DNA of 64,000 bases from Bugula neritina (lineage: Eukaryota; Animalia; Bryozoa): NCBI GenBank assembly GCA_964035545.1, contig OZ037765.1, positions 29,883,504 through 29,947,503 on the forward strand, read 5' to 3'. Numbering within the stretch: the first letter of the stretch is position 1; every line of letters starts with the position of its first letter. Below, one piece after another: positions 13,009 through 55,555 of this stretch. The position numbers and the translations under genes are program-made. The notes beneath the pieces are model-generated. The model was not told where the DNA came from. It ran no database searches and saw only the letters and a list, made by a program, of their open reading frames with translations.

Positions 13009-16000
13009 TTATAAATAGCTGCAGAATGAATTCCTCCAAGTTAAAAATAATAATAAGATAGGAATTATGAAAGTAATGGTGCTAACATGAATATTACTCG
13101 TTGCAGTATTACACCCGTCTACTTTACAGTGACAGTATTTCACTTTAACTCTGTAGGTGCCCAGTTTGTCATAACAGCTCCAGTCTTGTCTGGGGTTGTT
13201 GGCATCTAGCTCGCCCTCCTTCGCACACTGACGGATATATCTCATATGCCAGGCTCCTTCGTAGAATGCTACAAACAGCAATGTGAATATCTTCACAACA
13301 TCACAAATATGCCACACAGTAAATAATCAGAGAATATACCAAATCTAAAATTACTTTCTCAAAAGATAAATATGGCCAAGTTTCAACTCAATTGAGCGAA
13401 CAACTTCTTCAGAACATTATATATTCCATGTAAAGCTTTTGAAATTGCAAGAAGTTCATGAATGGCACAATCTCGAAGCTAGTAATCACACAACTACAGA
13501 TTACTTGGCTAAAAACTCTTTTAAGAGTTTCAATAAAACTGATTGAAAGAAATCACCTTCACCACTCCTTAACTTTTTCATGCAAATCGTCCACATATAT
13601 GGACACCATTTATATAACTCAAAGTGACTCATACAAAATTCATGCATGAAAGAGCTAATACCTGACTTGTATAATTTTTACCTAAAGTAGTCAATTGCAT
13701 AACAGTGGTAACGAGTTTGAAAAAAGCTTTTACTTGAATTTCTCAATTTTTTTATTCACTTACCTTTTAATAAATATTTCAATACCGAAAGCATCTGTTG
13801 AATGCAATAGCTAAGAGGGTAAATTATTCTTGTAAATTTCATACCGAAAATTGCTTTTACTATGAAAGAAAACTCCATAAAACTATCAGATTGGTGAAAT
13901 AGCTTTTTGACTGAAAATAATGAAGGTATAAATGAAGCTTTTAGCTTGCAGAGAAGTGGTCTATTTTCCATCAAGTCAATATTCAATACCAAATTCACTA
14001 ACTGCTAGTTTAAATGTGATAAAAACAGTTCAGCTCTCGTTAGCTATTTGAAGTATAAATACTGAAAGTTTCAAACTGTTGATGTAACAGTTGCAGTATA
14101 CTGCAACTGGTACAAATTTAGGAAAACTCTGCCGAGATCAATTAGGATAAACAACTCCAAATGTTACATTAACTAAAAACTACAGCCTACTGAGCAGCTA
14201 ACAAGCAGTGGAGACCAGGTAGACTGTCTCATTGTGTTACAAACAGAAACCGCACTTACTTTGCTGAATGACTTTCCTACAATATTTAGCATCTTCTGGA
14301 CAGGCATGGATGACGTACGTCTGGTTATTGAAGAAGTCAGCGCAGCCAGGGTCATCGTATGAGTTACACTGATAGCATTGTATACTGTATGCTAAAATAT
14401 TCAATTACATTCATAAAAACTAGTGCATGTTTACACCTTAACTTACTCATTGTAACTTACAAACAGTTTATATATTGCTGCCATGCTACAATCAGAAACG
14501 TCTAGATATTTACAAAGCTTTACAACTTTAGGAAGTTGAAAGGGAAGTGATGTAGTTGCTGGAACAGACAATTGCAATTAAATTATTTCCCCCAAACCCA
14601 ATGAGAGTGGCTTCTTTTAAAATAGAGTATATACAGCTACAGACAACACTTACAGCTACAGACTACACCTACAGACTACACTTACAGCTACAGACTACAC
14701 TTACAGCTACAGACTACACCTACAGCTACAGACTACACTTACAGCTACAGACTACACCTACAGACTACACTTACAGCTACAGACTACACTTACAGCTACA
14801 GACTACACTTACAGCTACAGACTACACCTACAGCTACAGACTACACTTACAGCTACAGACTACACTCACAGCTACAAACTACACTTACAGCTACAAATTA
14901 CACTTACAGCTACAGATTACACTTACAGAAGATACCTACATTTGATAGTGCATAATAGTTAAAACCAATAGGTAATATCAGAAATATAGGTTACTTGAAT
15001 TCCTATCATAAATAGATGGATTAGCTTTTTTAAATAAATTTTTCCAACTATTGCACTTAACCAAACTTTTTTAAAAGCTAATTAAGGCTTATCTTACAGG
15101 AAACAGAAAACAACTTCTCAGCATCATTAGAGCTCATGTGATAAGGTACACCCTAGTACTAACTGAAGGTCTGTCCACATGGACACATATAAGGGTAAAA
15201 CACATCCATGACTTAAAAATACAAACGGGACATTTTATTGCTAGAAAAAGCTTAAATAATCCACAGGAAATAGTCTATAGCCTACAGGATATAGGGAAAT
15301 TTTGCCTGGGAATACCATTCCTCAATAATCCTAATCATAGATAGTAACTTGAAGTGACTAAACAGTAGTAATTAGCTGTAATTATAAGCCAGTTCAAGTT
15401 TCAGTAATAGCCATTTAAAAGCAAACTTAGAGGTACTCATACCGATACTCATAGTCATACTGATACTGAGTCTAATAATAATAGTGATACTTATAACAAT
15501 AATAATAATTCTAAACTTAATGGCTCATACTAATAGTGATAGCAATGGTAATAATTCTACAGTAATGAAAATATTAATAATAAGTTTAATAAAAACAATT
15601 TTAATAAAATTACTTCAATTGGAATTTGGATTCCAAATCACCTTGAATTCCTTAATTATTCAATAGTAATTTAACTAATATTAATAACGAATAAGTAATA
15701 AGCAATAACAGTTTGATTTACTATAACTCAGTCAAAAAGTATAACTATAACAGTTATACTATAAGTTGAAAAATTAGAATAACTATCAGACTTAAACCAA
15801 GTCTAAGAGTTAGAGTAAAATAAACTTAAAGTTATTATTAAAGCTTAACTTTAAGTTTAACTTCAACTTGTAGTTGTAAGAGTTTAACTTTAGCTTTTTA
15901 AATGTAACTGGGAAACTAAAACTAAAATAAATCAGATTACAGTTGATGATTTATAACTAAAAAAATCAAAATATTTCTAATACAATAAACAACAAAAAGC

Positions 16001-29990: not shown

Positions 29991-30645
29991 TTTCCTTTAC
30001 AAAGAAATCTACTAAAGAAATTAAGTGGTGCTAGCTGTGATACTGGGTCATGCTCCCATTAAGAAACTTAGATATCAAGGAAATATTTATTAATTAACTT
30101 GTAAATACTCTTTGTATGTTATTGGCGGTTATACATAAGTTCTGTTCACTTATTCATTTTTGTGCAATACTCACAATCCATTGATTATAAATTGACTAAA
30201 CTGAATTTAATGTTGAACTTTCGAAGTTTTGATGTTCACACATTTGTTGTGCTACACTGTGCCTGCTTGGAATTTTTATATACATAGCTGTTAATGCAAG
30301 GCACTTTTTGCAACTGCTGGAATTGTACATGATTCAATTGTCAAATATCTCAAGAAAATTCTATAACAAAATAATGTATTTACTTTTTAAAGTTATTTAC
30401 GATAGGGCTATGACTGACACTCTCTATAACATAAATTATACGTCATATTTATTGAATTCCACACATTTTTTGTAACTTCACATGTCTAATATGTTATGTC
30501 ATTGTTTGTAAATGTCCATGTATATAATAATTATATATATTGTTGATATATTTTTGTATCATTGAATGACGCTCAAAATATTGTGTATAAATAAAAATAT
30601 GTTTGAAAGCAAAGACATTATGCAATACTTCCACTTCATGAGAGA

Positions 30646-31617
30646 TTACGTTATGCCAACTCTCATGCATTCTCTAACATAAAAACCCAGATCATCTCTC
30701 GACATTCCTTGATGTTTCTCCAACAGTTCTTTCAGCAACTTTCTCGCCCAATTCAAATCATCTTCCCACAATTCACTACAGTCTGGCTGAAGATGAATGG
30801 CTTTTTGGAAAGAGATAATAGAAGCTCTAATTTCTCCCATATTGAGTAGTGCTCTACCCAGAGTCTGCATTGATACCCACCATGTAGGGTTACAAGCGAC
30901 AGCATGCCTGGCTGCCTGAACAGCGGGGAACAATTCTCCCAGACTTGTAAGAGCCTGTGCCTTCATTTCCAGTGTTTTTGAGTTATCAGTGACTAACTGA
31001 AGTGATTCATTCCACTTCTGTATGGCCTCCCAATATCTGCATAGAAAGGAAGTTTTGTGCGCTGCTAGAATACAAAAGCTGAAGTTTCCAATCACTAGCT
31101 GAAAGTGATATCAAATAGGTCTAGTAAACCCTAAAATATTATAAAGACATTGCAATAAACATATAGCTCTGATAAAATTAGCCAGTCAAGTAATGTCATG
31201 TCTATTATTCACGAGCAAGTTATGAATATAAGGAAAATTTGGAGGAATTTGATTTTCCATGCTATGACTAACCGTCATAATGCATGACAGTTAATCCATC
31301 TTATCAATGATGCTATTTAGATATGCTGTGAGAGGCAGTAGTTTACATGAAGCTGTCATGAGACGGAGAAAGGGATTAACAAACCTCTCATGCTCAGCTA
31401 AGGTGATGCCTTCCATATTTAGCCTGTTGGCCTTTGCAATGCTGTCCTCCAGGTGAAGTCGCTGCCTTTTAACTGGAACATTGTGAAGCCAGTCCACGTC
31501 ATCACCCACCTCACCGGGGTCAATCTGTGCCTCATTTGAAAAAGCTTTACTTGCTGCTGAAGATGACCTTTTTATAACCCGAGAATGTTTACTTTTCCAG
31601 TTGAAAGAAGTAGCCAT
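30646..31617 (-). CDS. TTC33: Tetratricopeptide repeat protein 33 (~207 aa)
   Basis: Exons 31617-31385 (MATSFNWK...DWLH..KR..LED...EGITLAEHER) and 31036-30646 (YWEAIQKW..EMKAQAL..ELFPAVQAA..QTLGRA..WEDDLNWA). Matches the TTC33 pattern. A splice acceptor lies 13 nt upstream of the ATG. Confidence 0.92.
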
Positions 31618-32051
31618 GGGTGTTACACATCTGCAATAAAGAAACATGAATTTAAAGTTTATAAAATAGATTTCTATTTTACACTCTGACTTCCATCACT
31701 TTGGAAATATTGCAATATAGGAATAAAAGAGGCGTGTTTTTTATGTAACAAATATATTTCATATGAATAACACAAACCAATCTATTGGAACTCATATGTA
31801 CATCCAGTCTTAACAATAATATAAACCAACTCATTAAAATTCATACGTACATTTTTTCATGAATAATGCAGACCGATTGATCAACGTTCATTAAGTTTAC
31901 ATTAAATTATACATTTATAAAATATTAATTTAAAAAAATTAACATAACCATAAATTCATAACAATAACAATACATTCTCTTCTGAATCATCCGGCTATCA
32001 AGTGACACGGCTGAATACACAACGACATTAGCTCCCCGGGTGCTGTATGAC

Positions 32052-34273
32052 TCAACACAGGTGCACCCCGGGACCTTTGCCCACTGCCTTTTTCAAGCTA
32101 CTGAGGAATGACGTTAAAGTAGCGGTGCCCGTCACAGCGCCGATAGCGGCTGGGTTGTATCTTTTAGTATTGACATGGAAAGCCTTCCCAGAATCCATAT
32201 CTCCTGGTCCCCATGCGTCCACTTCAACTGTGTGCCATTCATGCAGCTGTGGGTCTGATACCAGCTTTCCAATAACCTGTTGCAATAGTAAACAAAAACC
32301 TCAAGTCAAAATAACTTGTAAACAAACCATTAGCTCAAGTTTTTAAGATCTGACCAACTAATATTCATAACATGTTGCTATAGTGAAAATAAATGTCAGG
32401 AGTGAAAGATAAAAAGCAGCCATAGCAGCTGACCTTGTCAAAACCAAGGTTGGATGCCAACATGGAAGCCACAGCCATGGTGTTGATGTTATTTGGAGCT
32501 AAAGGACACAGGCTACGGACATCTCCTTCATACAGAGTGATTACTTCATCAGTTACGCTGGCATTCTTCTCTTTCAGATAACCATTGAGTTTGAAACATG
32601 ATGGGTGTTTAGTCATTGTAATTTTTAATGCCTGTAAAATGAGCATATTACACATTATTAAATTAGCCAGTTGGTTAGAGATTAAGTCTTAAACATTCAT
32701 TAATATGCCTTTAATCAGTTACCTAATGCAAATATATAGGCTATTGTGTAGGACTCATAAATGCAAATGGCGGTTTTTGATTAATTTCAAACTACCTTTG
32801 AAGACACAAACTTTACCACACAGAAATGATATAATAACCAATAGTTTGGTCCCAAGGTTACAGTTGACCAATTCATTATTTAATAGACATAATTGTGTTG
32901 TATGAAATCATACCACACACCATTATTTAATTTATAATATGAAAAAAAAATCAGATTTGAAAGTTGAAATGAGATTCCAGGGCAAATTGTCTATTACAAC
33001 TTGTAAACCCCCTGATTATTAAGTAAATTAATGTTAAAGTTGTTGAGTATAACAGTTGTCATCAGATGCTTTGAAATTAACAGAGTGCGAGGTTTCCATT
33101 AGTGGCTCCCCATTATATGCAAGTTTAAAAAAATGTGGAGCAATTGAAATTCACAAGAAACATTTAGTCTCAGAAAGAAATTTGGTCCTACATCTATGCT
33201 TTGACCATTACTAATTTCAAGTGTCTATTTTTAAACATACATTTTAGTACTTTTGTATATAATTTTTTTCAAAATTTTCTGCAGATATAATGCACTTCTG
33301 CAGATATTATGTACTTCTGCAGATTACCATATACAAATGCAAATCACCATGTACTTAGGACTACAACAAATTGGACTTCACCTGCAAAGTTCCCAGATCA
33401 TTCATTTTCTTGATATCTTCACCTCCCCAGAGGGCACCTGCAGGAAGATAGATGGCATGTTTGACACAGGAAGCTCTTAATTCTCTCTCCACTTCCTGGT
33501 CTGCTAAGATAGTTGGCGACCCAATGAGGTAATCTGCAACCTTAAAAGAAATAATTATTTGTAGGTACGAATTGTATCATTTAAAGCATAATGGTGGGTT
33601 TTAGATGGCTTTAAATGAAATAAAATATATTGGGTTGACAACTCCCAAGTAATTAACCTACATTTAGTTTAATTATATTACAACGTATTATAAGTAAAAA
33701 TATTTGTTTTATCAAGGCTTCAATTACAAAGTTTAGATAAAACTTGTGAGATTCCGACCAATCGTGACGTTTCATCTCTGATATTAGCCAAGGAAAGTAT
33801 TTTTACAAGAAACTTTTCTTTTTCAAAATGCTTCAATTCTTGAATTTAATATTTATAAATAAACTAAATTATATTGAACATTTGCTTGAACTGATTATTA
33901 AAACACTTTATTATTACATTTCTGTATTTATACAGACTATATAACCTATATAGCTATCTGCACATGGCATACTAACTGCATATCTGCACATATCTGCTAA
34001 GTAGTTGTTATGAAATACCTCTAAGAATAGCTTTCCATAGTTTTTAGTGATACAGGGGTGGGCCACTTCTATAATTAAATCAGGGCTGCGCAGTGCTACA
34101 TCTTTGAGGTAGTGTAAAATATATTTCTCATCAACTTTGCCAGTTAAGGCATCACTGTTACGATTCCAAACAAAGGCTAGTTCAAGATCAGGATCTGTGA
34201 GAATCTGTTCTACTAGAAATGCTCCTAATTTACCGAATCCTACCACTCCAATTCTTCTTGGTTTGTGGGCCAT
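32052..34273 (-). CDS. ASPDH: Aspartate dehydrogenase domain-containing protein (~278 aa)
   Basis: Exons 34273-34019, 33540-33382, 32631-32434, 32276-32052. Rossmann IGVVGFGKLG, DLIIEVAHP, GSPTILAD, PAGALWGGEDI, APNNINTMA, RYNPAAIGAVTG and C-terminal GVHLC*. Acceptor at 34285/6 and a likely UTR exon ending at a donor at 34501/34500. Confidence 0.93.
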
Positions 34274-36334
34274 CAGCGAGAAAGCCTATTGCCAAGTATA
34301 GAGACATGCCTATACTACACATGATATCTATTAAGATTAGTTTCAAATTAATATTCATAACTCAAAATAAAAAGACGGCTAAATAGAACACAGTTTCATG
34401 CTTTCTAAACTTATAGTCTTAACTTTCAATTGAAATTTACAATCGTTCCATTCATCTTTATCTATTAATTTAGAAGCATAGAATATTATTAAATACCTAC
34501 CAACACTCAACAGCGCATAAGATTTCCAGTAATAATCCTTTGTGGCGCTGGCCTTTGGTGAACAGCAAATAAAATTAGAATAACCACTTTGGGTTGAGCA
34601 GTTTACACCAAAATGGCTAACATATAGTATGGTGAGAAATGTACTAAAATTTTTGAAGGCTTATTTACACTAGCACAAAACTTCCATGTACCTTACAAAT
34701 AATTTACGAGTTGAACTTAGAATTCCAAAGCTTTATTAACCATAATCAGTATGTTTAAGCAGCTATACTGTTGGGAAAACATACAAAGTCAGAGTGTAAA
34801 TATAAAAAATAACCCTTCAAAATATAGTTACCAAATTTGAAGGCCTATTCATTGACCCAAACAAACCAAACAACTGTCCAATAAAATACACATTTCATTA
34901 TAATTTAAAAGATACATTTTATTTTATTGAAATTACATATAATAGAATTTCAATAAAATAAAAATTTGCTTAGTTTTTATATGAATTTTGTAAAAACTCA
35001 TCTTCTTGGATGCAGACCAAGATTGGCCAATATAAGAGTTTATATAGTTTATAGGGACTCTATATGGTCATAGTGATAGAGATTTTATATAGGGACTTCA
35101 GATTCCTTAGATATCAGCAACTAAGAGGCAAAAGACTAAAGTAGACATGTCTATGTTGAAAAATTACCAAACAGTTGCTAGTTCTGGTTCTTTAATATAA
35201 GTCAACACTGGGTAACTAAGTAACTTTGCTACAGCATAACTTAAACATTATGGCTTAGCCGCTGCAATAGCTTTACATATCTAATGACTACATTACCATA
35301 ATCACTAGTTATTGATAATTAGTCATAAATCAAACTATAATTTATTAATTTGCTATATTGATTGTTAACAATAGTAGTACACTAAAAAGGATTATAAATT
35401 TATAATCATGATAAGAATGTACATACAATCTAATGATAAATCATTGTTCAAATTTAAACAAAGCAGCTTTTGTAGCAGTTAGACATAGAGTTGCTGGTGA
35501 GGTGTCAACAGACAATTCATGGACAAAAACTCTACGACTCTTTTTACATAATTTTGCAGCTATAACTTTTTTATTATTATTATACTCATACTGATAGTCA
35601 ATGTCATAGTGATACTGATGCTCATAGTTATATCACTATATTATGCTAGCCTAATAGGTATCAGCATGAGCATATAAATTAATAAGATGATACTCATACT
35701 CATAGTCAAAGTGATAGTCATAGTGATAGTCACAATAGATTCATAGCAATAGTGCTAGCCATACTGAATGATTATTAACATTATGATTATCATTATGATA
35801 TAATTGATACTGATATTGAATTTGATACTTATGAGTTATAAGTTATAACTATAAGTATAAGACTAAGAGTAAGTTACTAAAGTAAGAGTAACTCTAAGTA
35901 TAACTATAATTTATTTGATAAAAATTAAAATACAATAAATTATATAACAATCATTGCCCCGCACAACCATAAATATATATTTACTTCATAAATGCAATGA
36001 GATACAGAAAAATAGATACAGTAATTGAAAAGTGGTTTAAAATTGTGTCAACATTATTATTATTAATGTCAACAACCTACAAATAAGTATTTACTCATTT
36101 TAATAGTACGAAATCGCTAGGTGCAGCACAAAGTTTAGCATCGTTGAGTGTGTTGTTTGTATGGACACCCTTGTCCGAATCTTAAGCTAACTCCTTCCAC
36201 GAGCCACTGCACTCAAGGACAACCAAATTGGTGCTGCTTCAAGCTACTTTCTTGACAAAATTCACAATGAGCAGTTGCTTTGACATAGCGTAGTTCTTTA
36301 ATTAAATTAATTACATGGACTGTGACGATAAGCT

Positions 36335-36448
36335 TCTCGCGATATTATTTGACAACGTTTAATTAAAGTTTACAGGCTTACAAAGTGACATCAGGCCCGC
36401 GAAACTGTATTTGTAATCAAAATAGAAAAGGCTGTCCTGAGAGTATCG
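36335..36448 (+). promoter_or_regulatory. Putative ORC2 promoter / first non-coding exon with E2F-like and CGCG elements
   Basis: CCGCGAAA (reverse complement TTTCGCGG, E2F-type) at 36397-36404, TCTCGCGATA at 36335-36344, donor G|GTATGT at 36449. Confidence 0.5.
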
Positions 36449-37908
36449 GTATGTTTCTTTATTAATTATTAATATTATTACTCATACTCATGGTGCCAAT
36501 AATGCTCATACTGATACTCACGTTGTTGTTTTATACAGATAAATCGTTGAAATTTCTGGCGTGTAATTGCATCAGTTTGCTTAAATGTTAAATTGCCTCC
36601 AAACACTAACAGAACATTCTCATTCTGATTCTCATAGTCATACCCAATGGCCAATCTCATACTCATAGTCAAAGTTGATAGTGATACTGTTAGTCATCCT
36701 CAATCATTCTAATTCTTGATAATTTAAGTTTAAAATTTAATGACATTACAAAAGTCGAGTAAAAATATGAAGATAAAAATGAATATGAATACCATTATGA
36801 TTATAATTATTATTCTGATTATGCTTATACTTATAGTTAAACTTAATGTTATACCTATACGGCTATACCCGATACCGGCTATAACTTATAACTTATAAGT
36901 ATACCGTATACGTCATAATTACTTTAGTACGTTTATAATAACTTTAATGGTTATCATTTTAAATATGATTTATAATTAAATGATTAATATTGATTATTAT
37001 CACGGTGATTTTGATCATCAGTATCACTTAGTCATTATGATTATAAATTTATTATTATAATTACTAAATTAGTAATTATAAATCGTGATTGTCACTATGA
37101 CTGTGGGTATGACTATGTTCAATTTTAGGATTTTATCAATATCTAACATATTGATTTCATCTTATGATCCTAATCATAACACTTATCCTTATGATTATAA
37201 TGATATTAATAACTATAATCAATCACTGCATATAATTTTACTGATAAACATTAGTATCCGACAAACTAAGTATTATTATAAGTATGAGTGTAAACTATAC
37301 TGTATAACATTAATCTTAGTTATACTTGTTACTATAACTATTAGTATTACTTATCTACTTTTTGTTTTATTCAATTGCTGTATTACTAATACTGTAATAC
37401 TAATTATATGGTTATTAAATTTAACCCTTATTTTCATGGCAATAGTTGTGATGATAAACATATTGATATTGATGTTTAGTAATTTATAGTTATCAGGTGT
37501 CATCTTAGTCTTATACTTATAGTTTTAGTAATAGTAGTAATCGAATTACTAGTACTAGCTGTATGTTAATACTAGCATCAACAATTAAAGCAGGCGTAAA
37601 TTCAAGTCGAAGTCGTGACAAATCAACATGTTCATCAGCTACAAATAAGACTTTTCTGTGTTGCACATCACTGGTGCTTTACTTTTGGCATAGGAAGCAA
37701 CTAGGCTCTCCTTCTAACATATGAAACAAAAGCAAAGGCAAACTGAATATATTGCAATATATTCTCCTGTTCTGTATATAAGAACTGCATATTGCTTTAT
37801 GATAATCGTGAACTTGCAGACCATGTAAACACATTTCAAAGTTTATATTTGTATAGTATATATTTATAATTTTCTTTTTAAATAGTATATTTACCTGCAT
37901 AAGCAACT

Positions 37909-40900
37909 ATGAAGCAAAAACAGGAATCAGTTCACAACTCCACCCGAGAAATTAATCATATCCAAACTAATGCTACAGTCTCTTACATGTGTGATGGAAA
38001 ATCTCATAATTTACTTCAGGATGCCACCAAAAGATCAAAGCGTGAGTTAATTAGGAACTTAAATCTAATATTAATTTCTATTTACAAGTATTATAAAAAT
38101 AAATAAACAAGAAGCTTCTCTTTTGATTACTACTCTATGTATAAAATGATTAAATAAAATAAACTGAAATTTCAGATACCACTTCAAAATCTGAAGATGG
38201 ATACAATGGCATCTGAAATTTAAGTAGTAAAGTATAAGTAAGTATAAAAACGTGTTTCTCGTTTGTTTATATTTTAATCTAGATAAAATAATTTACAGGC
38301 AGCAACACAAAGGTTAGATACCCTCATGTTGGCGCAAAGACAGTCTCGTTGAACTTGCCTGCTGCCGAAGATAAAGAAAATGATGAGGTGATGCAAGAGG
38401 ACTATGACGTTGCTATCACTCATAAGCGTACGTCTACTCTGTCTCAAATAGCATTATAAATATTTATATATATTTACATAATAGGATGTAGAATATTGTT
38501 TACTATATACTTTGAATTCAAGGCAATAAAAGTAATGTCAACATAATTCATTTCTTAGAACAATGCAGTGAAGATGAAAATGACATAGACATAACAAATT
38601 TCTTTGGATTCAGAACTCCTAAGCGCTCTAAACTCTCAGGTATTTGGTTATACTTTGGTATGCGGTACTATCAGTTGTTATGATTTTATCTAACTCAGTT
38701 ATTATATACTGCAATTGCTATAATTATCTTCACTATTTTAATATGTCTTTTGCTATTATTCTATGCTATTTAGCGAGTTAATTTTTAACTGTGTGGCCCT
38801 ATATTCTGATAATGAATGAATATTCACGCTATTGTTTCTGTATGCAGGTAAAACTCCACTGAAAGAGCAAAGCAAGACACCCGCAACACCATCAGCCAGC
38901 AAGCGCCGCGCCAGGAAACTGAAGCTAAAGTCAAGCACCCCGTCTCGTCTGGTGGCCCGTATGACTCTTGGTTTGTATCCTCTCTGTTTTGTCTTATCTT
39001 CTCAGTATGAAAACTTAGTCTTAGTACGCTTTATATCACGTGTGTTTCCTGTGTAATTATATATATTATATGTTGCTTTTGGATCTTTAGGTTTTCAATC
39101 TGTTGTTTGTTAATATGCATCATCTACATTCTACAAGAATATTGTTCAGTTATGAGGAAATTGTTACTATAACTTCAGATGAGTCTGTGGACGATAGTAC
39201 AGACAGTGAAGGTAGTGAAGGCAGTGAAGACTTGCCCTCTGATTCCTTCCCTTCTACCATCTGCTCATCTCAGCAACTGGTGAGTAGAATATCGTGTTGA
39301 ATTACTTCACATACATGTCATGGACAGAGGAAGTTTGAGTTGCAAGCCGGCCTAATAAAGTAAAATGTTGATCGTCTGTTTTTTGTTAAAGTTACAGCCC
39401 AGCACAGATAGTTTTTCGTTCTCAAAAGTGATTGCCTAGCTTGATTGGTTAGATGTGAATGGATTAAAGCACCTGTCAGTGTGTGTCAGTGTCTCTATCT
39501 CTTGTAGCCAAGTCTTGCAGAAGATTTTTTTCATGCTCAAAGCCAAAAACAGATAACTAGTAATCATACGTTAGCTAAGCTTAGAGAAGAAGGGGTGTTA
39601 GACCAAACGTCCCTTAAAGATATCCTCTCCACAAAGTGCTGTCAATATGGTGAAGGAAGACAATTTCTTATGGAAGAGCATAGATCTATGTTTAGGAAGT
39701 GGATGTTACAACTGTGGTAGTTATCTTCTCTTTATACCGCAGTTCATTGTTCACTGCTGAATTATTTTGTCAAATGTAGTTAGTGGAAATTCATCGAAAC
39801 TAAATGGGAATTCATCATGAAAATTATGGTGCATGTTTATTTATATATTGGATTTGAGTTGAAGATGACCAGTAGCTTTTCTACAGTTATAATAATTTTA
39901 CTTAAAAATCAAACGGTATAATCAAGTTGTTTTTTTGCATTAAAAAAGTTTAGTGATGAATATTTTACCAGAAAACTTTAATATTCTATATGAGTATTAT
40001 GTACTTGCATGGACATGGCATTAGTATTAAGTATATTATTTTCTTTCTTATACGTGTTGCTTAGCAACAGAATTGCTAGTGATAAAGTTTACTTCATCCT
40101 TCACTGTTTTAGCCTGGGATTCAACCTCATTTTATATGGCTATGGTTCTAAGAAGGGGTTACTGGAAGAGTTCAGGAAGACAGTCTGTTCAGATTATCAC
40201 TGCGTTGTAATCAATGGATTTTTCCCTAGTATAACTTTAAAAAATGTAAGTTTTGAATAATTATAGTCAGCACTGGCATTATGACACCTGCATGCTAAGC
40301 TGTTCTTCATGAAAGTTTTATAATGAAAACTAGTAAAGCTGTTTCTGTATTTATTTTTTCAAAATGTTAAATATAATACAATATAGATCTACTAATTCAT
40401 TAGTAAAATTGTGTATTTTATCGGCCCATACAGCAAAGTGTATGTGAGAAAAGTATGGAGCTTATCTCGGATTTCTCTGTTTTTAAAATTTCTGTAGATA
40501 ATAGTTTCTATCTGCGAGGATTGTCTGCAGTTGAAAGAGATTCCTAGTGACTTTGATGAGGTGGTTCTGGCCATTGATGAGTATTTAACAAGCAATGGTA
40601 TAGTGTATATAGTAACGTAATATTTTATTTTATTTGGAATAAAATATTAAGTTGATATAATAAATGATATGATGTGATATAATATTATGAATATTTAAAT
40701 CAAAATCAGACTCTCCTATTGATGTACTAATTAATGTTCTGCGGATTTTTAAGCATGGTTATAATTTTCCAACCAAGTTTTCTAACCGATAGAATTATGA
40801 ATATTGGTTTATTGCTGAATTACTTCATTGGAATACGTAATGCATTTTTCAATGTCAACACTTGTAAATTGAGAGTTATCTATTTTGTGTCCTTTTTTAA

Positions 40901-43279
40901 GTAAAGACAACCCCACGAATTAAGCTGGTATAATTCACTGCTTTGTTCATATACGTGTGGCGATATATTAAATAAATTTTGCATTTATTATTATGTTAAA
41001 AATTTTTTTGGTTTAAAATTCTGTTGGTGCATTTGATGTGCTATGCTGGCATTGTAGATGAGGCCCTGTATATCTTCGTGCATAACATAGACGGTCCTAT
41101 GCTCAGGTTGTCTTCAGTGCAGACGTTCTTAGCCTCACTGTCTGCCGTAGATAATGTGCACCTCATCGCTTCGATAGATCATGTCAATGCCCCTCTCAGT
41201 AAGTTCAATTCGAACCATTTAAATATTTTCCTTTCAAAAATCTTACTTTACATTATTAAACTTGTTAGTTGTTGGTTGTAGAAATGCTCATTCTGTTCAT
41301 ATGTGGATAAAACAGCCTTAGTTAATATTTTATAAGCAATTTCGTTAGTTTAGGTGGCAGACATTTTATTTTGCTTTTGATGATTCTTTAAATTTTTACA
41401 ATATTTCACCGTAATAAACTACTTCACTTAGAAATTTGCATCATTTATTTCTCTACGTGTGTATCTATTGTCCTTCGGCAGTGTGGAATCAGTCTGTAGT
41501 GACTAAATACAAGTGGCTATGGTATGATGCTACGACCTTTGACCCCTATATTGAGGAAACCTCTTATGAGAACTCATTGTTCACTCAGCAGTCCGGCAAT
41601 CTCGCTCTTCGTTCCATGATTAATGTATTCAAAAGTCTAACTCCAAATGCAAAGAATATTTTCTTGCTGCTAACCAACTATCATTTAGAGCATTGTGCTG
41701 ATCAGTCATACAGTGGTAAGATAACTTCTAATTTAACTGTCTTTTCATACTTTTGATAAATCAATGCTAACATTAGTTGGTGCTTCTTAACTTTGTTCAT
41801 GCTGTTTATTATTGTTATTGGTTAAAATTAATTTAAATTTTTCTGATGTGCATTTACTTGTGCAGCTTTAAAAATTTTCGATCTTCATGCTGGAGTATTT
41901 TTACCTGCATGTGTGCGTTTATAGGGTTAATAGATACTAATGGTGTATTATATGCAGAAGTACGAGATGCTTAAGCTGTTTCTAGCGATTGTTACGTATA
42001 ATAGCTGTTATGAACACTGATACTTATAAATGATTTATCACTTTCGCTAGATGACCCTCCCAAGGGTATATCTGTAGAATGTTTCTTGTAATGACGGCAC
42101 GCGTTGCTGAATGCCACTGCTGTGATTCACGTACCAACTATTACAATACTGTTCCGTTCCATGCTTGCTTATATCTAAATCTCTTGTATCATTTTATTAA
42201 TTTAATCAATAAAATCAGTAAAAGGCTCTATGTAACTTTATTGCTTAACTTTTACATTCTTTTTAGTTTCAATGCTTTACTGAGGGCGTGGGTGTGCGGA
42301 AATAGGGGTGTGATGTGCAGAGAGTCTGATCTGTAGATAGAGTGTGAGGGTTTATGTCATATAATATTGTGTTACTGTCTCAACTTATTGCCCTGGTTTT
42401 ATTTTCTTCTCTTTATTAAACATTATTTGGTTTTAATTTTAGGCATTCCTTTCCAAATGCTTTACCAGAAATGCAGAGAAAACTTTCTAGTCAATAGCGA
42501 TCAAACCCTGAGAACACAGCTTATAGAATTCAGAGACCACAAGCTAATTCGTTCTAGGAAGGTAAAGTTCAGTCGCACACTGGGGCATGTCATGACGCCC
42601 CAAACATATAATTGTTTTGTAACCCAACTATAACGGGCTGTAGCCAATCACAGTGTCTTTCTAATAAAAGCCAATGCATAATTGGCTTCACAGTGACTAG
42701 CAGTGACAGACTAAACACACACAGTTACACTGTATTGATGTTTTACTGAAGTGTAAAATATGCAGTTCATAAGTTACATAAGTTGGTCCCATTATTAGGC
42801 CTAATTATCACTCTATAGTCTATGCGTTTACATTATAATATGTTTGTTTCTATAGTCTATATGCATATAATCTATGTGTCTATAGGTTATGTGTTATCTG
42901 CGTATATCCTGTACACTGTCAAGTATAGCAATTATATTAGTATGTATTGGTCATACCTCAATGTTTCCCCATAAGTAATGATGTCCATCATTAATACCAC
43001 CTAATCTATCACAAGCTTGGATACATGTAGCTTAACTCTACATTATATGAAACTGATCAAAACCATTTACTGTTTAAGTTCATGATTAGACACTGTAAAC
43101 ATTCTGTATAACTTTTTAAATGTTTATTTTCATTTCACATGAACTCATGTCAGCCCAATGTTCACATACGCCATATAAATTTCCAGGGAGCTGATGGAGC
43201 AGAGCATATATTTCTACCTGCCGATTCAAGTACACTTGGAGATTTCCTGCAGCAAGTGGAGTCCATGGACCATTGTTAG
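37909..43279 (+). CDS. ORC2: Origin recognition complex subunit 2 (~531 aa; N-terminal exon less certain)
   Basis: Exons 37909-38041, 38299-38427, 38559-38639, 38848-38970, 39179-39279, 39508-39716, 40113-40245, 40498-40597, 41058-41198, 41482-41715, 42443-42561, 43187-43279. Motifs [63 protein letters not shown] and [14 protein letters not shown]. Confidence 0.93.
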
Positions 43280-54275: not shown

Positions 54276-55555
54276 TTCTTCAACTTTTGGCTTCTGCAAA
54301 TAAAATTATTATACAAACTATATATTATAAGTAAAGGCAATTCAAACTTGAACTGTGTACATGATCATAACTGATTGAAAGTTGGAATCAAAAGCAACAC
54401 CAACTACCACTCATACTTTCAAAAGTTCATCAATATATAATGTATAGGCTATTGAAATTTTTATTTTGTACTGCAAAACTGCACAAATGGGCAACTAATT
54501 TACCATCAAAACTAGATTTACATTGGTATTATTTTCCACAACATAATTACGGTCAAAATGAGCTTAACATGATTTATAAAGTTGAAGTTTTACAAAACCG
54601 ATTTTAGTTTGATTGATTTACCTTTAGTTTTAAAAAACTTGGTCAAAATTAACAAAATTTCATAAGAAACAATTTTACATTTCGAAAATTAAGATTACAA
54701 TTAAAGCAAACTTTGAACCATGTTTAATGTATCCAATTTATTATTGGATACATTATTATACCAATGGGTGAATATATAAACTCATATTGATATTTAATAC
54801 AAAATAGATAACCCAAAAGAAACTGTATTACTATCAACATGAGCATGATACTGGTACCCATTTAGTTTTATATTAATAAAGCTAATTCCAATTGGAACTG
54901 AAAGCAGTTAGACTAAAGGCAAAGCAGTTATTGGATATAAAATTAAATATCAATATGAATATTCATATTGAATATCAACATTGATATAAATTTGGAATAA
55001 GAACATCAGACTAATAGTAATGATTAGATCAAATTCAATATTTATATTGATATTTTAAATTTAACTATCATATTCATATTATGAATAATTATGGCTATCA
55101 AATTGATTTGAATATTAATATGAATATTTGACTCTGTCTTTTTTAGTAGCTCAGTAGTCGTAGACGCAGTACAAGTGGCAGTGCTACTAATACTACCACT
55201 AGTAGACGTAGTACTAGTAGTTGCACTTGTTGACGGGCGCACAATCATCAGACACAATTCTTGACAATTACAATCAGTGAATAACATTGTTATCATTGTT
55301 ATTAACAATGATATTCATATTCATATTGACAATGACAAGATGAAGAAGTAGAACTAGAAGTAGAAGGAAAGATAAGCTCACGCAATGTTAAAACTGTAGT
55401 AAAAACAAAAATCCAAAAGCAAAATAAAGTTAGAGCAGCTTGAACCAATAACTATAAGTTTTAAGCATAATTGATATCAATAATAATAACATTAACATCA
55501 AGTGTTCAGTTAGTACTAGTAGTAGTAGTGTTGAAAACCTTCAAGTTGGAATGAC

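What the first reader, a model, noticed from the sequence alone, without database searches (positions are those of the whole stretch)
31617..32075. Candidate dicistronic ASPDH->TTC33 transcript
Seen in sequence: TTC33 has a strong acceptor (TTTCTTTATTGCAG|) 13 nt before its ATG, so it needs an upstream exon, yet the co-oriented ASPDH stop is only ~420 bp away. On the minus strand between them I find no AATAAA or ATTAAA, only weaker TATAAA/AATGAA. A plausible donor (AAT|GTATTG at 31974/31973) lies 78 nt after the ASPDH stop, where composition switches from GC-richer to AT-rich. Splicing there gives one mRNA: ASPDH ORF, a ~90-nt spacer, then the TTC33 ORF. It also puts the ATG at 31990 in frame with TTC33 (MIQKRICVTP-MATSF). 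Inference: a spliced bicistronic mRNA, or alternatively an operon-like unit resolved by trans-splicing. I know of no described ASPDH-TTC33 coupling.
Basis: partly seen in the sequence, partly recalled or inferred. Interest (0 to 1): 0.8.

Follow-up and report, generated by a model that had tools for sequence, protein, structure and literature searches.

The report
ASPDH-TTC33 shared transcript, leader-spliced TTC33
In this moss-animal (bryozoan) genome the two unrelated genes ASPDH and TTC33 lie on one transcription unit, and TTC33 does not use the predicted internal splice but gets its 5' end from a shared trans-spliced leader or from a far-upstream exon, the nematode-style "operon" logic that I found no report of in this phylum.

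Summary
The main reading is not supported. None of four RNA-like contig sets shows the proposed splice 31974->31630, and three of them read straight through 31974.

The acceptor at 31631/31630 is real and takes two kinds of 5' piece:
- **Trans-spliced leader.** In run X3 the exon is preceded by 17 nt identical to the 3' end of a ~70-nt spliced leader. That leader comes from a ~17-copy snRNA-like gene family on another contig.
- **Far-upstream exon.** In run X11 it is preceded by a 91-nt noncoding exon whose visible last 30 nt map uniquely to 36134-36163. That lies upstream of the whole ASPDH gene, beside a head-to-head ORC2 gene.

RNA contigs also tile the whole 420-nt spacer while introns stay empty. 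The ASPDH->TTC33 order, and an acceptor 13-23 nt before the TTC33 ATG, are kept in at least two other divergent lineages.

Best reading: a co-transcribed two-gene unit, with TTC33 mRNA resolved by leader trans-splicing or by long-range cis-splicing. The ASPDH poly(A) site and any promoter in the spacer remain untested.

Earlier notes of this scan already reported leader trans-splicing and two-gene units elsewhere in this genome.

The parts
36134..36224 (-). Noncoding exon 1a. In run X11 it is cis-spliced straight to the TTC33 acceptor at 31630, skipping all of ASPDH. The 5' limit is taken from the 91-nt contig overhang.
   Evidence: X11 record 6 has a 91-nt loose end at 31630; its last 30 nt match 36134-36163 with 1 mismatch, and the reference version of that 30-mer occurs only once in the 216-Mb genome. 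The reference reads AAA|CTTTGT here. The nearest GT is 4 nt further on, so the exact donor in the reference strain is unresolved.
36250..36450 (.). Inferred bidirectional promoter region between exon 1a (minus strand) and an ORC2 gene (plus strand).
   Evidence: ORC2 RecA-like domain exons on the + strand from ~40 kb; locally GC-richer sequence. Promoter activity is an inference, not a measurement.
35547..35906 (-). Six-base periodic tract lying in the intron/outron just downstream of exon 1a.
   Evidence: periodicity scan (d = 0.36); very deep multi-copy RNA contigs with many loose ends at 35580-35860. No such tract exists anywhere in 30000-35500.
34501..34588 (-). ASPDH 5' noncoding exon with donor GTTG|GTAGGT at 34501/34500. 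The 5' limit is approximate.
   Evidence: X11 record 7 has an 88-nt loose end at 34293; the visible part of it aligns best at 34529-34498, including a 15-nt exact run. The RNA lineage is too diverged there for the 95% read filter.
34017..34312 (-). ASPDH first coding exon, ATG at 34273. RNA aligns up to 34293. The acceptor is probably GTGTAG| at 34313, with a 17-nt indel between lineages.
   Evidence: (joint 34017/33538; pieces ending at 34293).
33381..33538 (-). ASPDH coding exon 2.
   Evidence: joints in X1, X3 and X11.
32432..32630 (-). ASPDH coding exon 3 (Asp_DH_C).
31693..32274 (-). ASPDH last exon. Stop TGA at 32054-32052, then at least 360 nt of 3' UTR read without any splice.
   Evidence: X11 record 7 covers 31696-32274 and X1 record 4 covers 31797-32274. 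Asp_DH_C.
31631..32051 (-). Spacer between the ASPDH stop and the TTC33 acceptor. It is present in RNA at exon-like depth and is as conserved as a UTR.
   Evidence: X1 records 2, 3 and 4 tile 31385-32274 while intron bins read ~0; 92.5% identity to a sister lineage, against 90.5% for the intron and 82.3% downstream of TTC33.
31973..31974 (-). It is present in the sequence but not seen in use.
   Evidence: no 31974->31630 joint, and three runs read through the site.
31385..31630 (-). TTC33 first coding exon. The acceptor at 31631/31630 takes the spliced leader (X3) or exon 1a (X11). ATG at 31617. An out-of-frame uAUG sits at 31630.
   Evidence: (loose ends at 31630 and 31632; joint 31385/31036).
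30602..31036 (-). TTC33 second exon (TPR). Stop at 30648-30646. AATAAA at 30453-30448 lies just beyond the RNA piece.

Best explanation
ASPDH and TTC33 form one co-transcribed unit on the minus strand.

**How the unit is read.** Transcripts that start upstream of ASPDH run through ASPDH and the 420-nt spacer into TTC33. The start is at the promoter shared head-to-head with ORC2 (exon 1a, ~36224), and possibly also at ASPDH's own 5' exon (~34590).

**How TTC33 mRNA is made.** It is made at the acceptor 31631/31630 in two ways:
- by trans-splicing of a ~70-nt spliced leader, supplied by snRNA-like SL RNA genes elsewhere in the genome;
- by cis-splicing from exon 1a, 4.5 kb upstream, which removes ASPDH as part of an intron.

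**What is shown.** The acceptor is used. The leader's 3' end is joined to it. Exon 1a is joined to it. RNA is continuous across the spacer. The 31974 donor is not used.

**What is inferred.**
- The leader-bearing TTC33 mRNA comes from the same precursor that also yields ASPDH mRNA, a true operon in the nematode, tunicate or chaetognath sense. I put this at about 50%.
- The spacer holds no promoter.
- ASPDH mRNA ends shortly before the acceptor.
For: **The acceptor and its two 5' partners**
- X11 record 6 reads 91 non-local nt, then 31630-31385, then 31036-30602.
- those 91 nt end in a 30-mer that maps to 36134-36163 (1 mismatch), a site unique in the genome. A single precursor must therefore span ASPDH.
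- X3 has the loose end TTATAGTTGCATAAA plus AG at 31632.

**The leader is real**
- 5 exact and 24 one-mismatch copies of that 17-mer in the genome, against 2 for the reversed control.
- it is the 3' end of a conserved ~70-nt exon followed by |GTAAAT, in about 17 gene copies on contig C8. These have a conserved upstream CACACCGTTT box.
- the ~140-nt intron part is conserved and has a covarying stem.
- the same exon is fused to unrelated ORFs elsewhere. It is therefore a leader, not a local exon.

**The spacer is transcribed**
- X1 contigs tile 31385-32274 while introns read 0-4.

**Promoter cues**
- the only promoter-type periodic tracts near the unit flank 36.1-36.5 kb. None lies in the spacer or just upstream of ASPDH.

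**Conservation**
- gene order and strand are kept in lineages with 50-70% protein identity. Spacers are 546-582 nt and ~1470 nt. Every lineage has an AG acceptor 13-23 nt before the TTC33 ATG.
Against: - The leader junction rests on one short contig overhang (15 + 2 nt) in one run.
- All RNA evidence is assembled contigs from sister lineages, about 3-8% diverged from the reference. Contigs cannot show molecule ends, strand or abundance. Overlapping contigs do not prove a single molecule.
- In the reference, exon 1a is followed by CT, not GT. The cis junction therefore needs a lineage difference (a substitution or a 4-nt indel) that I could not check.
- My single read-laying run stopped at 36000. 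Exon 1a itself was therefore never laid.
- No data exist on ASPDH poly(A) sites or on transcription starts in the spacer.
- In the L013 relatives an AATAAA sits mid-spacer, so ASPDH may end well before the acceptor there.
I did not test it here.
Confidence: 0.6

Rival explanations
1. Nested genes with alternative outcomes, not an operon. TTC33 is a gene whose promoter and first exon (1a) lie at ~36.2 kb, and ASPDH is an independent gene with its own promoter (~34.6 kb) inside TTC33's first intron. Each precursor yields either ASPDH or TTC33 mRNA. The leader form arises only from the long TTC33 precursor. The RNA over the spacer is just a long ASPDH 3' UTR.
For: -: exon 1a is spliced directly to TTC33.
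- ASPDH mRNA carries a different 5' exon (~34501-34588).
- the X11 ASPDH contig stops at ~31693, before the acceptor.
Against: - An acceptor with a cis donor upstream would not be expected to take a leader.
- X1 record 2 runs from the spacer across 31630 to the exon-1 donor with no break.
- No promoter-type periodic tract lies upstream of the ASPDH 5' exon.
- It is not known whether the ASPDH 5' exon is a first exon or an internal one. A plausible acceptor, CACCAAAG|G, sits at 34551.
Confidence: 0.2
2. TTC33 has its own promoter inside the 420-nt spacer. Its short outron is replaced by the leader, as for most trans-spliced monocistronic genes. Adjacency to ASPDH is incidental.
For: -: a leader at 31630 does not by itself require an upstream gene.
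- the spacer is long for an operon (420 nt here and ~1470 nt in L028).
Against: -: the exon 1a-TTC33 join shows that transcription from upstream of ASPDH reaches TTC33.
- RNA is continuous from spliced ASPDH exons into the spacer.
- the spacer holds no periodic tract.
- gene order is kept across divergent lineages.
Confidence: 0.1
3. A stable, unresolved dicistronic mRNA (ASPDH ORF, unspliced 420-nt spacer, TTC33 ORF, polyadenylated at 30448-30453) is the main TTC33 template. TTC33 is translated by reinitiation or internal entry. The leader and exon-1a forms are minor.
For: -: in X1 the contig with TTC33 exon 1 continues unbroken into the spacer. Its word depth (70) is similar to ASPDH (82) and TTC33 exon 2 (59).
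- the first canonical poly(A) hexamer after the ASPDH stop is the one behind TTC33.
Against: - Contig depth is not a measure of abundance, and overlapping contigs need not be one molecule.
- X1 is random-primed total RNA.
- The spacer contains many AUGs and stops.
- Two processed TTC33 forms exist in other runs.
Confidence: 0.07
4. One reading: a cis-spliced bicistronic mRNA made by removing 31973-31631. An N-terminally extended TTC33 starting at ATG 31990 is an optional consequence.
For:: the GT at 31973 and the reading frame are as described.
Against: -: no such joint in four runs from four studies.
- three runs read through the site.
- no clearly corresponding donor in the L013 spacer (read by eye).
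Confidence: 0.03

Closest known systems
Spliced-leader-resolved operons of nematodes, tunicates, flatworms and chaetognaths (for example RP S14-PCNA in Spadella, PMC2481426)
   Same: - Co-oriented unrelated genes.
- The downstream gene's first coding exon opens with an acceptor a few nt before the ATG, and that acceptor receives a leader from separate snRNA-like genes.
- RNA is continuous across the intergenic stretch.
   Different: - The spacer is 420 nt (546-1470 nt in relatives), against about 100 nt in C. elegans and 0-3 nt in Ciona or Spadella.
- The leader is about 70 nt, longer than the leaders I know of (16-51 nt, from my own knowledge).
- No specialised downstream leader was tested.
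- The same acceptor is also used in cis.
- I found no report of trans-splicing in this phylum.
Cholinergic gene locus (unc-17/VAChT nested in the first intron of cha-1/ChAT with a shared 5' noncoding exon). This comparison comes from my own knowledge.
   Same: - A far-upstream noncoding exon is spliced past a complete, co-oriented upstream gene to reach the downstream ORF.
- One promoter region serves two unrelated proteins.
   Different: - I could not show that exon 1a is also used by ASPDH, which has a different 5' exon.
- The two proteins have no known functional link.
- A trans-spliced leader competes for the same acceptor.
Drosophila-type dicistronic mRNAs (for example Adh-Adhr, stoned) and the two-gene messengers this scan noted elsewhere in the genome (s1-457112, s1-475693, s1-472187)
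   Same: - Two ORFs of unrelated genes lie on one transcribed stretch.
- The gene order is conserved in relatives.
   Different: - Those pairs sit 5-80 nt apart on one mature mRNA.
- Here the gap is 420 nt, and the downstream ORF demonstrably gets separate 5' ends by splicing.

Membership tests
SL trans-splicing operon | Same-strand neighbouring genes with no intervening gene | tested here: met
   ASPDH stop at 32052, TTC33 acceptor at 31630, both on the minus strand.
SL trans-splicing operon | The downstream gene's mRNA carries the spliced leader at an acceptor just upstream of its ATG | tested here: met
   the X3 overhang at 31632 is 17/17 identical to the leader's 3' end. This rests on one contig in one run.
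SL trans-splicing operon | A leader donor RNA encoded elsewhere: multi-copy gene, exon|GT donor, snRNA-type promoter, Sm site | tested here: inconclusive
   about 17 copies on C8, AAAAG|GTAAAT, a conserved upstream box and a covarying stem. No canonical Sm site was recognised and there is no Rfam match.
SL trans-splicing operon | A polycistronic precursor spanning both genes | tested here: met
   the exon 1a (36134-36224) to 31630 join requires a precursor that contains ASPDH. X1 contigs tile the spacer. This comes from contigs, not from single molecules.
SL trans-splicing operon | The upstream gene is cleaved and polyadenylated in the intercistronic region, shortly before the trans-splice site | not testable with these tools
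   Contigs show no ends. The X11 ASPDH contig stops at ~31693. The spacer has no AWTAAA.
SL trans-splicing operon | No independent promoter for the downstream gene | not testable with these tools
   Only indirect evidence: the spacer holds no periodic tract.
   the joint is absent in X1, X3, X5 and X11. X1, X3 and X11 read through 31974.
Shared-5'-exon nested locus (cholinergic-locus type) | A common upstream noncoding exon is spliced alternatively to each of the two ORFs | tested here: inconclusive
   Exon 1a to TTC33 is shown. Exon 1a to ASPDH was not seen. Only the last 30 nt of the ASPDH leader are visible, and they map to ~34501-34529.
ASPDH (aspartate dehydrogenase domain-containing protein) | N-terminal NAD-binding Rossmann part plus the Asp_DH_C domain | tested here: met
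   exon by exon: NAD_binding_3 E = 1.6e-4; Asp_DH_C E = 2e-9 and 2.2e-5. The single-exon scores sit near or below Pfam's whole-protein cut-offs. The joined protein was not searched.
TTC33 | A short TPR protein that groups with TTC33 rather than with other TPR families | tested here: met
   TPR_2 E = 1.1e-7; the top Atlas cluster is 'Tetratricopeptide repeat domain 33' (0.98, 211 of 256 shared features), with further TTC33 clusters at ranks 11-12. This is a feature-based match, not an alignment.

The most novel reading that the evidence does not exclude
Bryozoans run true SL-resolved operons. In ASPDH-TTC33, one precursor yields both a polyadenylated ASPDH mRNA and a TTC33 mRNA capped by an unusually long (~70 nt) leader. 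The same acceptor can be served in cis from the unit's first exon or in trans. The pairing has been kept across divergent bryozoan lineages because of this shared transcription. That would add a phylum to the patchy list of animals with operons, and would give a locus where cis/trans competition for one acceptor can be measured.
Probability: 0.45. Interest if true: 0.65.

Novelty: new member of a known kind. Interest (0 to 1): 0.5.

Why it matters
**The wider question.** Leader trans-splicing and operons are scattered oddly across animal phyla, and each new phylum bears on whether they arose once or many times.

**What this locus adds.**
- I found no paper reporting either feature in Bryozoa.
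- It gives direct, though thin, evidence that a downstream gene of a co-oriented pair receives the leader.

**Practical consequence for annotation.** Bryozoan genes that begin with an acceptor just before the ATG should not be given invented upstream exons or fused to their neighbours.

The pairing of ASPDH with TTC33 has no evident functional meaning.

Tried and rejected
- **Junction 31974->31630.** Looked for in four runs and absent.
- **TTC33 spliced from the ASPDH 5'UTR exon.** Not seen. The TTC33 leader in X11 maps to 36134-36163 instead.
- **X3 overhang as a local exon.** The 15-mer has no match in the window even with 2 mismatches. That pointed to a leader from elsewhere.
- **Sister-lineage genomic DNA across the exon 1a donor and the ASPDH 5' exon.** Two exact-pattern scans of metagenome contigs found nothing. 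The CT-instead-of-GT puzzle at 36133 therefore stays open.
- **Full-length spliced TTC33 or ASPDH proteins from transcript contigs.** The two word-index protein searches returned only exon-sized ORFs from genomic contigs. No further transcript 5' ends could be fetched.
- **Rfam.** No family matched in the window or on the leader gene.
- **Absence of AATAAA/ATTAAA as evidence.** Rejected as weak, since it is about 28% likely by chance.
- **Joined (spliced) protein models.** Deliberately not built or searched. Exons were searched one by one by reference.
Full report
**What is in the sequence**

Two genes lie on the minus strand. ASPDH has its ATG at 34273 and its stop at 32054-32052. TTC33 has its ATG at 31617 and its stop at 30648-30646.

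- ASPDH exons hit NAD_binding_3 and Asp_DH_C.
- TTC33 exon 2 hits TPR families. Its nearest ESM Atlas cluster is named TTC33, at score 0.98.
- Exons were searched one at a time by reference. I did not build or search a joined protein.

- a strong acceptor ending at 31631, 13 nt before the ATG;
- 422 nt from the ASPDH stop to that acceptor;
- no minus-strand AATAAA or ATTAAA in between;
- a GT at 31973;
- the frame relation to ATG 31990.

The missing hexamer is weak evidence. AWTAAA occurs about once per 330 nt of strand here, so a 422-nt gap has roughly a 28% chance.

**RNA evidence**

I laid window 30100-36000 against four contig sets from four studies (X1, X3, X5, X11). They behave as RNA: every intron bin reads 0-4 while exons read 20-80.

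- The joints confirm the ASPDH introns (34016-33539, 33380-32631, 32431-32275) and the TTC33 intron (31384-31037).
- No run has a 31974->31630 joint.
- X1 record 4 (31797-32274), X11 record 7 (31696-32274) and X3 record 10 (31899-32025) read straight through 31974.

The proposed cis splice is therefore not supported.

**What the acceptor at 31630 is joined to**

Two different things.

*A far-upstream exon (X11).*
- X11 record 6 (772 nt) holds both TTC33 exons preceded by 91 nt that lie nowhere in the laid stretch.
- The last 30 of those 91 nt match window 36134-36163 (minus strand) with one mismatch.
- The reference version of that 30-mer occurs once in the whole 216-Mb assembly.
- This noncoding exon, which I call 1a, lies 1.6 kb upstream of the ASPDH 5' exon and 4.5 kb upstream of the acceptor.
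- The intron it defines contains the entire ASPDH gene, so a single precursor must span both genes.

*A spliced leader (X3).*
- An X3 contig carries, just before the exon, TTATAGTTGCATAAA plus AG.
- That 15-mer is absent from the window.
- The 17-mer has 5 exact and 24 one-mismatch copies in the genome, against 2 for the reversed control.

**The leader**

- Four of the exact 17-mer copies share about 55 further conserved bases upstream.
- One copy (L005, also held as L016) continues AAAAG|GTAAAT.
- A search with that unit finds about 17 copies at 86-100% identity, scattered over contig C8 at 11.85-13.14 Mb. More divergent sets lie on C3 and C5.
- Aligned copies show four features:
  - a conserved CACACCGTTT box about 55 nt upstream;
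  - an exon of about 70 nt starting near AGAGTGTGTT;
  - the GT donor;
  - a strongly conserved intron part of about 140 nt with a covarying stem.
- I saw no canonical Sm site, and Rfam has no match.
- At other loci the exon alone is fused to unrelated sequence, including PHD-finger ORFs that look like retroelement ORF1s. This is what retrocopied leader-bearing mRNAs would look like.

This reproduces independently what earlier notes of this scan reported for the genome (s1-481163, s1-457112). Those notes also name the organism as the bryozoan Bugula neritina. I did not verify the species myself. A 'symbiont metagenome' run label and a 'BRYA' sample name are consistent with it.

**The spacer**

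- In X1, contigs 31385-31741, 31712-31811 and 31797-32274 tile the whole spacer, joined to spliced ASPDH exons. Their breaks fall at indel polymorphisms.
- X1 record 2 crosses the acceptor unspliced and ends exactly at the exon-1 donor.
- In X11 the ASPDH contig runs to ~31693, so the ASPDH 3' UTR is at least 360 nt.
- Against a sister-lineage genomic contig (L011), the spacer is 92.5% identical. The TTC33 3' UTR is 93.8%, the TTC33 intron 90.5% and the region beyond TTC33 82.3%.
- Contigs cannot show ends or single molecules. The ASPDH poly(A) site and the existence of a mature dicistronic mRNA remain open.

**Upstream end of the unit**

- Exon 1a sits next to a GC-richer stretch (36250-36450).
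- Beyond that stretch an ORC2 gene runs the other way.
- Six-base periodic tracts lie on both sides, at 35547-35906 and at 36582-36923 plus 37408-37652. None lies anywhere in 30000-35500.
If that holds, the only promoter serving this unit is the one shared with ORC2. I did not test that link.
Whether it is a first exon or an internal one could not be seen.

**An unresolved point**

In the reference, exon 1a is followed by CTTTGT, not GT. The nearest GT is 4 nt further on. The RNA comes from lineages 3-8% diverged and rich in indels, so a substitution or a 4-nt indel would explain this. Two pattern scans for sister-lineage DNA found nothing.

**Relatives**

- Genomic contigs from at least two other lineages keep ASPDH followed by TTC33 on the same strand.
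  - L013 and L030-L034: TTC33 exon 2 64% and ASPDH last exon 71% identical.
  - L028: TTC33 exon 1 51% and ASPDH 66-68% identical.
- Their spacers are 546-582 nt and about 1470 nt.
- These lineages, and L014, all have an AG acceptor 13-23 nt before the TTC33 ATG.
- In L013/L033 one AATAAA lies about 63 nt before the acceptor and another lies mid-spacer. L030-L034 have only the mid-spacer one.

**Reading**

The best-supported account is a co-transcribed two-gene unit. TTC33 mRNA is produced at one acceptor, either by leader trans-splicing or by long-range cis-splicing from the unit's first exon (confidence 0.6).

Whether one precursor yields both mRNAs (a true operon) or each precursor yields only one (a nested gene with alternative processing) is about even. 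Three readings are less likely:
- a private TTC33 promoter in the spacer;
- a functional unresolved dicistronic mRNA;

**Comparison and novelty**

The unit works like the SL-resolved operons of nematodes, tunicates, flatworms and chaetognaths (PMC2481426 gives the chaetognath case and a table of phyla). It also resembles the shared-5'-exon cholinergic locus, a comparison from my own knowledge.

It differs in three ways:
- the long spacer;
- the long leader;
- the dual cis and trans use of one acceptor.

Full-text searches found no report of leader trans-splicing or operons in Bryozoa, and no paper mentioning ASPDH together with TTC33.

I class it as a new member of a known kind. The general phenomenon was already noted by this scan on other DNA of the same genome. 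What this locus adds is a leader seen on the downstream gene of a pair.

Noticed in passing
window 36250-41756 (+ strand gene) and 35547-35906, 36582-36923, 37408-37652: An ORC2 gene (RecA-like_ORC2, E = 1e-16 to 1e-18 per exon) sits head-to-head with the ASPDH/TTC33 unit. Six-base periodic tracts flank the shared GC-richer region on both sides. Further tracts lie at 14682-15942 and 55054-55455.
   Followed up: partly
L016:1441-1710 (G000:C8:12439933-12440133) and about 16 further copies on C8 at 11.85-13.14 Mb; divergent sets on C3 at 31.46-31.63 Mb and C5 at 8.08-8.32 Mb: A spliced-leader RNA gene family of ~210-nt units. Each has a ~70-nt exon, a GTAAAT donor, a conserved upstream CACACCGTTT box and a covarying stem. 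There is no Rfam match and no obvious Sm site. The C5 copies share only the intron part, so they may carry a different leader.
   Followed up: partly
L003:1447-1762, L004:1447-2564, L002:1447-1600: The leader exon is fused directly to ORFs with a PHD finger and a coiled coil, which look like retroelement ORF1s. These look like retrocopies, or a retroelement family, whose mRNA was leader-trans-spliced.
   Followed up: partly
window 31630-31589 (-); L013:3881-3905: TTC33 exon 1 opens with an out-of-frame AUG whose 13-codon frame overlaps the main ATG. The relatives L013 and L030 also have out-of-frame AUGs between the acceptor and the ATG. This is a possible conserved translational brake.
   Followed up: no
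window 34294-34312 (-): A 17-nt stretch between the direct repeats TATA..GGCA appears to be missing from the X11 RNA contig, and all three RNA lineages (X1, X3, X11) stop aligning at 34293. This blurs the position of the acceptor of the ASPDH first coding exon.
   Followed up: partly
window 36131-36134 (-): The reference has CT where the exon 1a donor should be, and the nearest GT is 4 nt downstream. This is a lineage difference, a shifted donor in the reference strain, or a non-canonical junction.
   Followed up: partly
window 33044-33211: A low-depth (4.2) X1 contig lies inside ASPDH intron 2. It is the only intronic RNA signal in the unit, and its origin is unknown.
   Followed up: no
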